DNA from: Lytechinus pictus
Taxonomy: Eukaryota
Length of the DNA: 64,000 nt
Assembly: GCF_037042905.1 (NCBI RefSeq)
Contig: NC_087251.1
Location: 44,268,001 to 44,332,000 of the forward strand
Reading direction: 5' to 3'
Below, piece after piece: positions 36,201 to 39,200 of the stretch (position 1 is its first letter; each line of letters begins with the position of its first letter). The notes below the pieces were generated by a model. The model ran no database searches and was not told the DNA's origin. It saw only the letters and a list, made by a program, of their open reading frames with translations. Both the position numbers and the translations under genes were made by a program.

Positions 36201-39200
36201 TGGGGAGGACTTGAGCTTTAATGGCAGCAATGTACAGGTAAACACATTTGAATCAAACATAGTGAGGGCCTGGAAAACCAAATTTGACCATTTCGACCCA
36301 GGCAGAGAATTCCTATAACACGTCTGAACCAAAGCATGCATAGGAACACTTGATAACAGCTGAGGAACAGCAGAGGGGCAAATAAGTCTTCTTAACTTTA
36401 TGCCCAACATCAAGGTAAATTCAGGGTAAAGGTGTTTTACAAAGATGTTGGTGAAGTTTTCTTTTAGAAATTACCCTTAAAAGGCATGCTGAATAAGTTC
36501 AAGAGCGCATCAATTCATAATTAAATTGCAGATAAAGATTGTTTATCTTTTTTCTCAAATACTATAACTGCTAATGCAAAGTACATTTCTGCCTTTTTAT
36601 TGAATTCAATGAAGATTCAGCTTGTCTCTAAAAAATAAATCAATAAACATCTTTGGTCATCCCAGATATCTCATTCAAGTCATTCATTAAGTCCAAAATG
36701 TAACTCAAGAATGAAACTTGATTAAGTTCTATTCTACATGCATCTTCAGTGCTAAAAACATATAATTCCTTTCTTAGAGAATCAGATGAAATAAAATAAT
36801 AAATTCCGATACTAAACTTCAGGGTTGTTCTTCTTCAGAATATGAGCTGTAGAGAAAGCAAGCACACTCACCTGACTTGTATAGGTTGGGAATATTCTTT
36901 CCTGAATCATTGCCGTAATATATCATTTAACCTTATCTTAACTGGGTTATTTCGGACCAACATAATATATACTGCGGGGGGGGGGGGGGGGTCAATTTGA
37001 CCCCCCTCAGATCTCATCCGTTGATTGCGCGATCGCCGCGAAAATTTGCACACGCATAGAGCCGGATGTAAACTCCAAGACTGTAAAGTAAAATTTTCAA
37101 AAAATTGATCGCTTATATTTTTTATTAATTATGCAAATAAGCGTATGAAATTTGCCCTAAATTTTGTGTGTGTATGTTTTTGCCTTTAAATCACTTTATA
37201 TAGCTAGTAGAATGCTAATTTTTGGTGAACATATATTAATTTTTACATTTCTAACAAAAATCTACAAAAAAAATTGCCTAAAAATAATTAATTTCCTATG
37301 TATTCTGTTTTTTAATTATGTATTTCCTTGTTTTTTCAAACCTTTGTTTTTTATTGTTTTTTGGGATGAACTTTGTCGGGGACCCTTACTGATTATTGAT
37401 GGGGCTGCCCTGTTTGAATTAAATAAAATAACCTCCTTTTGAGGCAACATGATCTGTTTCAGAAAGCAAGCACACTCACCTGAGTTGTATAGGTTGTGCA
37501 TATTCTTTCCTGAATCTCTTCAGATCTTCTCTGACCACACTCACTCCTCTGTCAATAGCTGCTTGGTCTTCTTCCGTGGGCGGAGGGTCTGGGATCTCAA
37601 ACGTAAACAATCACTTTGGTCAAGGGAAACTTCAACAGTAATAATAATAATAATAGTTCAAGCTATCAAGAATCTTTTCTGTGTGCAAATATCAGACTTG
37701 CATGCGCTTCTGCGGGCATCTGCGTGTGAGATGCGAGAGAGATACTGTCAATGCGGGCGATCTGCGGGTAGCAAAAATAGTTACTCGCAAGGCTTGCACG
37801 GAAACGATGTGACAGGGTCTTCGGGCCGACGCTCTATAGTTGAGCCTCCATTGAGAAGCCCAGTACATACATCTAGAAAGCATGAAGAGTCCTCTTCCCT
37901 GTTGATTAAAGAGCATCATTGTACTTGGTGCAGTACACAAGTGAATCCAATAAGCCAGTTCACGGTTAGCTCATGATCAACTCTTCTCAAATGACCTTTG
38001 TGATTTTTCATTAGGATAAGCACTATCGTTTTCAAATGTAGATGTTGCGTAAGCTTTACCAGTAGAGTATTCAAATTCTAAGAACAAAAGGCATTGTATA
38101 GACCAGGTGACTAGAATAGTACATCAGGGATAAAGTTTGGAATTCTGTTTTATTGTCTGCCTTTGGCACATTTGACTATTGTTTAGGCTACTGTCAAATA
38201 CCAGTGATTATGAAGGCTCTATTTATTACTCTTCAGCTTGAATGTGATAAAATGAATATTTTGAAAGGAATACATGAATAATCATCAAATCACAAATGCC
38301 TATGTCAGTGAATTTGAAAGCCACCTTCATGGTTTATCTAAAAAATGACCTTTTTCTGCTCTTGCGCAGTTTACAACCGTGAACAGGCTTATTGCCCAGA
38401 AGTCATTGATAATATTGTAAAAGCAGTAGAGGTAAATATCAACGCCTTGCTAGAATGTGGTCAAGTTATTTTATTGTGTGATGATATAAGTGATCTGCAC
38501 CAACATATTGGAACTCCAAGCTTATAAGCTGATTACCTATTTTGTCAGACCCTCAAAAACGATTTCTGTTTCTGTTTCTAGTAACTCCCGCAGGAACTCG
38601 GCAGGACAGCATTTTTGCTGGTATGTAACCAATTACCTAGGAAACATTTTACGTCTAGGTTAATCAGTCATAGCGGCTGACCTTATAGACGAATGATAAT
38701 TTGGTAGGGTTATGTACATAAAAAAGTATGCATAGGTCAACAGATGTCAAAAACACTACACACATCTTGTATAAACTGAAATTCATTGGAATCAAAGGGG
38801 GAAATTGGATGATCCATGTACAAAGAGGTACAATCGACTGCAAATATTAAGCTTATTTTCATCACTTACACACGAGTACACCACCAGGTTACATAAATAC
38901 ATGAAAAGGATATCTCTTGAAGAGCAGCGAGAGAAGCTCCTGCGGTTTGCAGAATGACCTGTAGGTGGTCAGGAAGGTTCGGACGAAGGACGGGTCAGCG
39001 TACTTGTGATAGGTCAGTCTTTCGATCAGTTTCAGGAGTGTTCCTCCCTTGATGAGCGGCACCCCTGCCATTGACTTCTGACCTTCCTCAAAGACGATGT
39101 TGTCCGGTGAGTCTTCCTCTACAAAGCTGGAACGAAGAAGAAAAAAAAGAGAAAATCCAAAACTTTATACATTGAAACATGTGTATTGTACAAAGTGGCA

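What the first reader, a model, noticed from the sequence alone, without database searches (positions are those of the whole stretch)
37603..38913. AT-AC minor-spliceosome intron in the SOS REM domain
Seen: the exon ends AAG AG|ATATCCTTTT and the intron ends TTTCCCTTGACCAAAGTGATTGTTTAC|G TTT GAG. No GT-AG pair gives the conserved L.R.FEIP junction. Established: ATATCCTT, TCCTTRAC and AC are the U11/U12 consensus. Such introns are rare, slow to splice, often mis-annotated, and known in Ras-MAPK pathway genes such as RAF and MAPK family members. From memory, human SOS1 has a phase-2 intron at the equivalent Arg followed by a 123-nt exon. I cannot confirm its class. It may be a rate-limiting control point for Ras activation.
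Basis: partly seen in the sequence, partly recalled or inferred. Interest (0 to 1): 0.7.

Follow-up and report, generated by a model that had tools for sequence, protein, structure and literature searches.

The report
Minor-spliceosome AT-AC intron in SOS
The Ras activator gene SOS in this animal genome carries a real, correctly spliced intron of the rare minor-spliceosome (U12, AT-AC) class; it is an old intron shared with related Ras/Rap activator genes and with SOS of other invertebrates, so it is a solid catalogue entry and not a new kind of thing.

Summary
On the minus strand, SOS REM-domain exon 39126-38914 ends AG|ATATCCTTTT. The 1311-nt intron (38913-37603) ends with a CCCTTGAC branch box, 16 nt, then AC. 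Exon 37602-37480 follows.

- **Splicing:** a 4509-nt transcript contig joins 38914 to 37602 exactly. The three neighbouring introns are ordinary GT-AG.
- **Class:** the splice-site and branch-site 12-mers are identical to those of curated mammalian minor introns. The genome has U11, U12, U4atac and U6atac genes.
- **Paralogues in this genome:** a C3G-like and an Epac-like gene have AT-AC introns in the same codon (RasGEF_N profile position 49, phase 2). A RalGDS-like gene has a GT intron there.
- **Other SOS genes:**
  - The sea spider Nymphon striatum and two unnamed public contigs have a complete AT-AC intron in that codon; a third contig shows its 5' end.
  - Two contigs have GT-AG there.
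  - A mite, an ant and an ostracod have no intron there.
- **Mammals:** SOS1 and SOS2 are absent from the human/mouse minor-intron catalogue.

The intron is therefore an ancestral U12 intron, kept here and converted or lost elsewhere. The "rate-limiting control of Ras" idea is untested. The scan noted other AT-AC introns in this genome in other genes, but not this one on other DNA.

The parts
38914..39126 (-). SOS REM-domain exon (213 nt) ending in phase 2: ...LLSLLFK + AG of the split Arg codon
   Evidence: The transcript contig piece covers 38914-39126 (table 8). The translation matches SOS1/SOS2 structures at E 1e-27 and RasGEF_N profile positions 2-47.
38905..38913 (-). U12-type 5' splice site ATATCCTTT (intron positions +1 to +9)
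   Evidence: Read. The 12-mer GAGATATCCTTT is identical to the 5' sites of the mouse Mcmbp and Zdhhc14 minor introns, scored 92.7. It is complementary to the genome's own U11 5' end and to the U6atac AAGGAGA box (the pairing is my inference).
37603..38913 (-). AT-AC intron, 1311 nt
   Evidence: It is skipped exactly in the X1 transcript contig. No Rfam RNA lies inside it. Its interior is repetitive.
37619..37630 (-). Branch-site box, TTTCCCTTGAC within GTTTCCCTTGAC; presumed branch A at 37620, 17 nt before the last intron base
   Evidence: Read. The 12-mer TTTCCCTTGACC (37629-37618) is identical to the branch sites of the human KANSL2 and RNF121 minor introns, scored 85.5. It is complementary to the U12 GUAAGGAAA box of this genome (my inference).
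37603..37604 (-). 3' terminal AC of the intron; the 16 nt before it are half purines, so there is no distinct polypyrimidine tract
37480..37602 (-). Next SOS REM exon (123 nt): G + [13 protein letters not shown]...YAQPIQL, followed by a GT-AG intron
   Evidence: The transcript contig piece covers 37480-37602. The joint 35575/37480 has 5+19 raw reads. Translation.
37948..38394 (.). Repeat inside the intron bounded by 20-nt inverted arms (MITE-like); not part of the splicing signals
   Evidence: Inverted repeat. RNA reads lie on both strands at high depth and only 90-95% likeness across 37718-38839.

Best explanation
This is a constitutively spliced U12-dependent (minor-spliceosome) intron of the AT-AC subtype. 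It splits the Arg codon that aligns to position 49 of the RasGEF_N (REM) profile in the SOS gene.

**Inferred mechanism (from the established one).**
- U11 and then U6atac pair with ATATCCTTT at the 5' end.
- U12 pairs with the CCCTTGAC box and bulges out the A at 37620.
- The AC 17 nt downstream is used as the 3' end.

**Shown here.**
- The exact junction in RNA.
- The signals themselves.
- Presence of the four minor snRNA genes in the genome.

**Inferred.** Dependence on the minor spliceosome.

**Origin.** The intron is old. The same codon carries AT-AC introns in the C3G-like and Epac-like paralogues of this genome, and in SOS of a sea spider and other invertebrate-like contigs. Some SOS genes have a GT-AG intron there or none, and mammalian SOS1/2 are not catalogued as minor-intron genes. 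The likely history is an ancestral U12 intron kept in this lineage and converted or lost in others.
For: **Junction in RNA.** In one search, table 8, X1 record 1 (4509 nt) lies on 40616-40495, 39647-39564, 39126-38914, 37602-37480 and 35575-35410, with contiguous record positions and no mismatches. The neighbouring joints are GT-AG with raw-read support. The first-mate strand shows the RNA is from the minus strand. Exon 37480-37602 is covered by 10 and 16 raw reads at 37575.

**Signals.** Read. The 12-mers are identical to curated minor introns. The review PMC3584512 defines the class by its 5' splice site, its branch site and the lack of a pyrimidine tract.

**Machinery.** Hits over the Rfam cut-offs: U12 x4, U6atac x2, U11 x3, U4atac x2. 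Their sequences carry the expected pairing boxes.

**Paralogues in this genome**:
- C3G-like gene: AG|ATATCCTTT ... TCCTTAAC, 10 nt, then AC.
- Epac-like gene: CA|ATATCCTC ... TTCCTTGAC, 11 nt, then AC.
- RalGDS-like gene: AG|GTATTTTT.
- All four introns, SOS included, split profile position 49 in phase 2.

**Orthologues.**
- AT-AC in L034, L035, L036 (5' end only) and Nymphon striatum L042.
- At least 15 protein clusters read through the exon end as R-Y-P, which is what [A/G]TATCC translates to.
- GT-AG in L040 and L041.
- No intron in a mite, an ant and an ostracod.

**Mammals.** RAPGEF1, 3, 4, 5, L1 and RASGRP1-4 are listed as minor-intron genes. SOS1 and SOS2 are not.
Against: - The row for the 38914>37602 joint was not among the 15 of 38 joints that one search printed. 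I therefore have the junction from one transcript contig (run X1, whose RNA label is a guess, though a contig that skips four introns must derive from spliced RNA) and not as a raw-read count.
- No contig of the related organism B bridged the junction.
- The branch A lies 17 nt from the intron end, longer than the published optimum of 11-13 nt.
- The first base of the branch box is C, not T.
- Dependence on the minor spliceosome was not tested.
- That the mammalian RAPGEF and RASGRP minor introns lie in the same codon is inferred only from matching exon-end trinucleotides.
Confidence: 0.92

Rival explanations
1. The intron is U12-type and also acts as a regulated, slow-splicing bottleneck that limits SOS protein and hence Ras activation.
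For: From the literature, not from this work: some U12 introns splice slowly (abstract of PMC4066798). Retention here would meet a stop codon 8 codons into the intron (KRYPFHVFM*), so unspliced RNA could not make full-length SOS. Three Ras/Rap exchange-factor genes of this genome share the intron, which would allow joint control.
Against: There is no measurement. The dominant assembled transcript is fully spliced. Depth in the unique intron edges is within the noise of exon depth, and the interior is repeat-derived on both strands, so retention cannot be read. Many lineages replaced or lost the intron without losing SOS, which argues against an indispensable regulatory role.
Confidence: 0.1
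2. It is an AT-AC intron removed by the major (U2-type) spliceosome. A rare class of that kind is known.
For: AT-AC ends are not exclusive to U12 introns (PMC3584512). The distance from branch site to 3' end is somewhat long.
Against: The class is defined by the 5' splice site and the branch site, and both match the U12 consensus. Both are letter-for-letter identical to curated minor introns. There is no pyrimidine tract. The same signals are conserved in four other taxa or contigs and in two paralogues.
Confidence: 0.03
3. The U12 signals are a recent, lineage-specific acquisition in this genome, not an ancestral state.
For: Mammalian SOS1/2 are not minor-intron genes. Some SOS orthologues have GT-AG at this codon.
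Against: An AT-AC intron is in the same codon in an arthropod (Nymphon striatum) and in several divergent contigs. It is also in the C3G-like and Epac-like paralogues. Change from U2-type to U12-type is considered far less likely than the reverse (PMC3584512).
Confidence: 0.03

Closest known systems
Mammalian RAPGEF1 (C3G) AT-AC minor intron, listed in MIDB (Olthof et al. 2019, PMC6717393)
   Same: It is an AT-AC intron in a CDC25-family exchange factor. The human 5' 12-mer is CAGATATCCTTT, identical to the C3G-like gene of this genome, which has its intron in the same REM codon as SOS.
   Different: It is a different gene (a paralogue). I could not check directly that the mammalian intron lies in the same codon.
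Mammalian RAPGEF3/4 (Epac) and RASGRP1-4 minor introns
   Same: [quoted passage not shown] The Epac-like gene here has an AT-AC intron at REM profile position 49, like SOS. The human RAPGEF3 branch site GTTCCCTTGACT resembles the SOS one.
   Different: They are paralogues. A RasGRP gene of this genome was not located, and the position of the RASGRP introns is not known to me.
SOS1 and SOS2 of human and mouse
   Same: They are the orthologous gene. The REM exon is about 75-85% identical in protein.
   Different: They are absent from the human and mouse minor-intron lists; the alphabetical table runs SNRPE then SPAG16. Any intron at that codon in mammals is not catalogued as U12-type. I did not inspect mammalian DNA.
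SOS of Nymphon striatum (GCA_016618385.1; GenBank KAG1658475-77)
   Same: It has an AT-AC intron in the same codon and phase, with ATATCCTTTT at the 5' end and TTCTTTAAC plus 9 nt before the AC. The intron is 1669 nt.
   Different: The deposited gene models read into the intron and join elsewhere (LIERYPFYMLFQEYWNY...). The intron is therefore not annotated as such.
U2-type AT-AC introns (Wu and Krainer 1997, cited in PMC3584512)
   Same: They have the same terminal dinucleotides.
   Different: Those lack the ATATCCTT 5' site and the TCCTTRAC branch box, both of which are present here.

Membership tests
U12-type (minor-spliceosome) intron, AT-AC subtype | 5' splice site [A/G]TATCCTT at intron positions +1 to +8 | tested here: met
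   ATATCCTTTT at 38913-38904. The 12-mer GAGATATCCTTT equals the curated mouse Mcmbp and Zdhhc14 minor-intron 5' sites, scored 92.7.
U12-type (minor-spliceosome) intron, AT-AC subtype | Branch-site consensus TCCTTRAC close to the 3' end | tested here: met
   CCCTTGAC at 37626-37619 matches 7 of 8 positions. The 12-mer TTTCCCTTGACC equals the curated human KANSL2 and RNF121 branch sites, scored 85.5.
U12-type (minor-spliceosome) intron, AT-AC subtype | Short distance from branch site to 3' splice site (optimum 11-13 nt) | tested here: inconclusive
   The branch A at 37620 is 17 nt before the last intron base. That is short compared with U2 introns but beyond the stated optimum (PMC3584512). The paralogous and orthologous introns have 9-12 nt after the box.
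U12-type (minor-spliceosome) intron, AT-AC subtype | AT and AC terminal dinucleotides, and no distinct polypyrimidine tract | tested here: met
   AT at 38913-38912 and AC at 37604-37603. The 16 nt between the box and the AC are half purines.
U12-type (minor-spliceosome) intron, AT-AC subtype | The sites are really used in RNA | tested here: met
   The X1 transcript contig joins 38914 to 37602 exactly (table 8). The raw-read count for this joint was not printed.
U12-type (minor-spliceosome) intron, AT-AC subtype | The organism has U11, U12, U4atac and U6atac snRNAs | tested here: met
   All four are found over the Rfam gathering scores in the window's own genome. Sequences.
U12-type (minor-spliceosome) intron, AT-AC subtype | Splicing depends on the minor spliceosome | not testable with these tools
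   This needs a knock-down of U12, U6atac or a U11/U12 protein, with retention read out.
Shared REM-domain minor intron of CDC25-family exchange factors (RAPGEF1, Epac, SOS) | Intron in the same codon and phase of the RasGEF_N domain in the paralogues | tested here: met
   The exon ends of SOS, the C3G-like (L016), the Epac-like (L014) and the RalGDS-like (L013) genes all align to profile positions 47-48. The split codon is therefore position 49, phase 2. Three are AT-AC and one is GT.
Shared REM-domain minor intron of CDC25-family exchange factors (RAPGEF1, Epac, SOS) | The mammalian RAPGEF and RASGRP minor introns lie at that same codon | not tested
   There is only indirect agreement of exon-end trinucleotides: human RAPGEF1 CAG| and RAPGEF3 CCA| against CAG| and ACA| here. 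No mammalian DNA was inspected.
SOS (son of sevenless) Ras exchange factor gene | REM plus CDC25 domains preceded by DH-PH, with sequence closest to SOS1/SOS2 | tested here: met
   PDB hits to SOS1/SOS2 at E 1e-27. PH, linker, REM and CDC25 peptides lie in order on the minus strand. RasGEF and RasGEF_N hits are in the window.

The most novel reading that the evidence does not exclude
The AT-AC intron at RasGEF_N profile position 49 is a single very old U12 intron. On this reading it was inherited from the ancestral REM-CDC25 exchange factor before SOS, C3G, Epac and RalGDS-type genes diverged. It has since been converted to U2-type or lost independently in several gene lineages and animal lineages, including SOS of vertebrates. 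Where it survives, one rare splicing machine handles several Ras and Rap activators at once.
Probability: 0.55. Interest if true: 0.45.

Novelty: new member of a known kind. Interest (0 to 1): 0.33.

Why it matters
**Annotation.** The intron must be modelled as AT-AC or the SOS protein comes out wrong. GenBank's Nymphon striatum SOS models show exactly that error.

**Evolution.** This is a clean case in which one codon of one domain carries three states:
- a U12 intron in three paralogous exchange factors and in distant animals;
- a U2-type intron in other genes and taxa;
- no intron in several arthropods.

It can therefore be used to time U12-to-U2 conversion and intron loss.

**Function.** It gives no evidence for special control of Ras. 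It does mean that, in animals that keep the intron, minor-spliceosome defects would hit SOS, C3G and Epac together. In mammals SOS1/2 escape, because they are not minor-intron genes.

Tried and rejected
- **Chance motif:** rejected. ATATCCTT alone is at chance frequency and the other four copies are not at exon ends. This copy coincides with the exon end, the branch box, the AC and the RNA junction.
- **Nearby GT-AG use:** only one in-frame pair keeps the exon (38900/37596). It breaks the conserved KRFEIP and is not the form in the transcript contig.
- **Measuring intron retention:** not possible. The interior 37718-38839 is covered by repeat-derived reads on both strands at 90-95% likeness. 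The (ATT)n stretch at 37627-37665 was skipped by the tool. The edge bins are within exon-depth noise.
- **Raw-read count of the AT-AC joint:** the row was among the 23 joints not printed, and read laying allows one call. The printed rows look ranked by summed depth, and organism B's run X8 has no bridging contig; I think that explains the omission, but this is my inference.
- **RNA hosted in the intron:** none in Rfam.
- **Literature on a SOS minor intron:** none found. The supplements of PMC7507305, PMC11347168 and PMC7367187 held nothing usable.
- **RasGRP paralogue:** 10 kb upstream of six further CDC25-domain loci showed no REM-like exon ending in a U12 5' site. That is not evidence of absence.
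- **P0044, P0023 and P0002 DNA:** not obtainable. Nymphon was reached through the longer model P0153.
- **Organism identity:** not established here.

Full report
**What is in the sequence**

Read on the minus strand, a coding exon ends ...CTC TTC AAG AG at 38914. The next bases are ATATCCTTTT, starting at 38913. The intron ends 1311 nt further on with GTTTCCCTTGAC, then 16 nt, then AC, with its last base at 37603. The sequence G TTT GAG ATC CCA follows from 37602.

The two exons translate to ...[35 protein letters not shown].... The upstream exon matches the solved SOS1 and SOS2 structures at E about 1e-27. PH, linker, REM and CDC25 peptides lie in order along the minus strand.

- The branch box is CCCTTGAC, which matches 7 of 8 positions of TCCTTRAC.
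- ATATCCTT by itself is at chance frequency in the window, 5 found against 3.7 expected. The other four copies lie in low-complexity or repeated DNA, not at exon ends.

**Is it spliced there**

I laid two stranded raw RNA runs of the same species (X19, X20) and contigs of two older runs (X1, X8) on 35100-40700.

One 4509-nt contig of X1 lies without a mismatch on 40616-40495, 39647-39564, 39126-38914, 37602-37480 and 35575-35410. Its record positions are contiguous across all four gaps, so it is a spliced SOS transcript that joins 38914 to 37602 exactly.

The three neighbouring introns are GT-AG. They have raw-read joints of 5+19, 2+12 and 5+15 reads, all with the first mate on the plus strand, which fits an RNA from the minus strand. 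The 123-nt exon 37480-37602 is covered by 10 and 16 raw reads at 37575.

I therefore cannot give its raw-read count. The printed rows look ranked by summed depth, and the organism B run has no bridging contig; I think that explains the omission, but this is inference.

Near the junction, only one in-frame GT-AG pair keeps the exon. It would give KRYPFHIPDP, which is not the transcript form.

**Is it U12-type**

The class is defined by the 5' splice site, the branch site and the missing pyrimidine tract, not by AT-AC ends alone (PMC3584512).
- The 5' 12-mer GAGATATCCTTT is letter-for-letter the 5' site of the catalogued mouse Mcmbp and Zdhhc14 minor introns, scored 92.7.
- The branch 12-mer TTTCCCTTGACC is that of the human KANSL2 and RNF121 minor introns, scored 85.5. 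Both come from the supplement of PMC6717393.
- The 16 nt between the box and the AC are half purines.
- The presumed branch A at 37620 is 17 nt from the intron end. That is longer than the quoted optimum of 11-13 nt, and it is the one feature that is not ideal.

The window's genome is 812 Mb in 368 contigs, and the window is C7:44268001-44332000. It has U12 (4 hits), U6atac (2), U11 (3) and U4atac (2), all above the Rfam cut-offs. Their sequences carry the expected boxes:
- U11 starts AAAAAGGGC.
- U6atac has AAGGAGA.
- U12 has GUAAGGAAA.

The pairings I draw from these are inference.

**Paralogues in the same genome**

A search of the genome with the RasGEF_N profile found six REM-containing genes.
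- **C3G/RAPGEF1-like gene:** it has proline-rich PPxLPxK exons upstream. Its REM exon ends ...DLLNKLLY + AG|ATATCCTTT. The 677-nt intron ends TCCTTAAC, 10 nt, AC.
- **Epac-like gene:** its exon ends ...LCPALLQ + CA|ATATCCTC. The 1182-nt intron ends TTCCTTGAC, 11 nt, AC.
- **RalGDS-like gene:** its exon ends ...LGILLK + AG|GTATTTTT, a U2-like site.
- **Two other genes:** they have no intron at this position.

I aligned the exon translations to the Pfam profile. The last full codon of SOS, the C3G-like, the Epac-like and the RalGDS-like exons falls on profile position 48. All four introns therefore split position 49 in phase 2.

In mammals, RAPGEF1, 3, 4, 5, L1 and RASGRP1-4 are catalogued minor-intron genes. 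RAPGEF2, RAPGEF6, RALGDS, RASGRF1, SOS1 and SOS2 are not (review). Human RAPGEF1's 5' 12-mer CAGATATCCTTT equals the C3G-like one here. That agrees with, but does not prove, the same position in mammals.

**Orthologues**

A profile-free search of 1.84 billion representative proteins with the 70-residue exon gave 787 hits. Many short hits are open reading frames called on genomic contigs, and these run past the exon end. At least 15 clusters continue R-Y-P-[F/L/C], which is what AG|[A/G]TATCCT translates to.

DNA fetched for some of them shows the following.

| Locus | Source | State at the codon | Intron length |
|---|---|---|---|
| L034 | unnamed ENA contig | AT-AC; branch box TCCTTGAC, 12 nt, AC | 6207 nt |
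| L035 | unnamed ENA contig | AT-AC; branch box TTCTTAAC, 9 nt, AC | 127 nt |
| L036 | unnamed Logan contig | ATATCCTTTT at the 5' end; contig ends before the 3' end | not known |
| L042 | sea spider Nymphon striatum | AT-AC; branch box TTCTTTAAC, 9 nt, AC | 1669 nt |
| L040 | unnamed ENA contig | GT-AG, same codon and phase | 377 nt |
| L041 | unnamed ENA contig | GT-AG, same codon and phase | 1371 nt |
| L037, L038, L039 | mite Tropilaelaps, ant Odontomachus, ostracod Cyprideis | no intron; coding sequence continuous across the site | none |

The deposited Nymphon SOS models (KAG1658475-77) read into the intron and rejoin elsewhere. The AT-AC join would restore LIER-FDIPEP.

**Reading**

The simplest history is an old U12 AT-AC intron at this codon. 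It was present in the bilaterian SOS gene, because it occurs both in an arthropod and in this genome.

The intron probably goes back further, to the ancestral REM-CDC25 exchange factor, because C3G-like and Epac-like genes have it too. It then changed to U2-type in some lineages and was lost in others. The direction of change follows the general view that U12-to-U2 conversion is easy and the reverse is not.

I found no paper that mentions a minor intron in SOS. It may still be listed in the intron databases for annotated invertebrate genomes, which I could not query.

**Function**

Nothing here speaks for a rate-limiting role. The dominant assembled transcript is fully spliced.

Retention could not be measured, for three reasons:
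- The intron interior carries repeats, including a MITE-like element with 20-nt inverted arms.
- Those repeats draw reads on both strands at 90-95% likeness.
- A simple ATT repeat next to the branch site was skipped by the tool.

If the intron were retained, a stop codon follows 8 codons in. Unspliced RNA would then be non-productive. That holds for most introns and is not evidence of regulation.

**Verdict**

The observation and the class assignment are right, and the functional speculation is open. The finding is a new, well-supported member of a known kind. Its modest evolutionary interest is a shared intron position across Ras/Rap exchange factors, with all three states (U12, U2, absent) visible. 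It also has practical value for gene annotation.

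Noticed in passing
G000:C15:23017752 (minus strand; locus L016 and L018): The C3G/RAPGEF1-like gene of the same genome has an AT-AC intron of 677 nt in the same REM codon as SOS. It runs AG|ATATCCTTT ... TCCTTAAC, 10 nt, AC.
   Followed up: yes
G000:C13:7096769 (minus strand; locus L014 and L019): The Epac-like gene has an AT-AC intron of 1182 nt in the same REM codon. It runs CA|ATATCCTC ... TTCCTTGAC, 11 nt, AC.
   Followed up: yes
L042:22709-24377 (Nymphon striatum, GCA_016618385.1, JABFOP010000724.1): GenBank's SOS gene models KAG1658475-77 read into the AT-AC intron (LIERYPFYMLFQEYWNY...) and rejoin downstream. 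The AT-AC join restores LIER-FDIPEPSPP. This is a public mis-annotation caused by the intron class.
   Followed up: yes
window 37718-38839: The intron interior is made of repeated elements. RNA reads lie on both strands at depth 60-125 and only 90-95% likeness, with sharp repeat boundaries (loose ends at 38617 and 38692). There is a 20-nt inverted pair at 37948-37967 / 38375-38394, as in a MITE.
   Followed up: partly
window 33282-33175, 33101-32994, 32920-32770 (minus strand): There are three near-identical copies of the peptide [21 protein letters not shown]...[13 protein letters not shown] at the start of the CDC25 domain. Only the last continues as a full exon.
   Followed up: no
window 35661-36221: Two stretches of the next (GT-AG) intron draw very deep contig and read coverage on both strands in all four runs. 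That suggests a highly expressed or high-copy repeat family.
   Followed up: no
window 35485, 35499, 35533, 37575, 39600: Exonic single-base differences appear in all or most raw RNA reads of runs X19 and X20, but not in the X1 contig. These are most simply strain or allele differences, not editing.
   Followed up: no
L038:6201-6695 (Odontomachus brunneus SOS): The ant gene has no intron at the RF(D/E)IP codon. It has a short intron of about 105 nt after ...FLTTYR instead. Several arthropod-like fragments (P0053, P0069, P0096, P0111) also break a few residues further on, after ...SFCTPT.
   Followed up: no
window 52548-52817: A run of 270 N (assembly gap or masked) lies inside the SOS gene region. 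It was left untouched.
   Followed up: no
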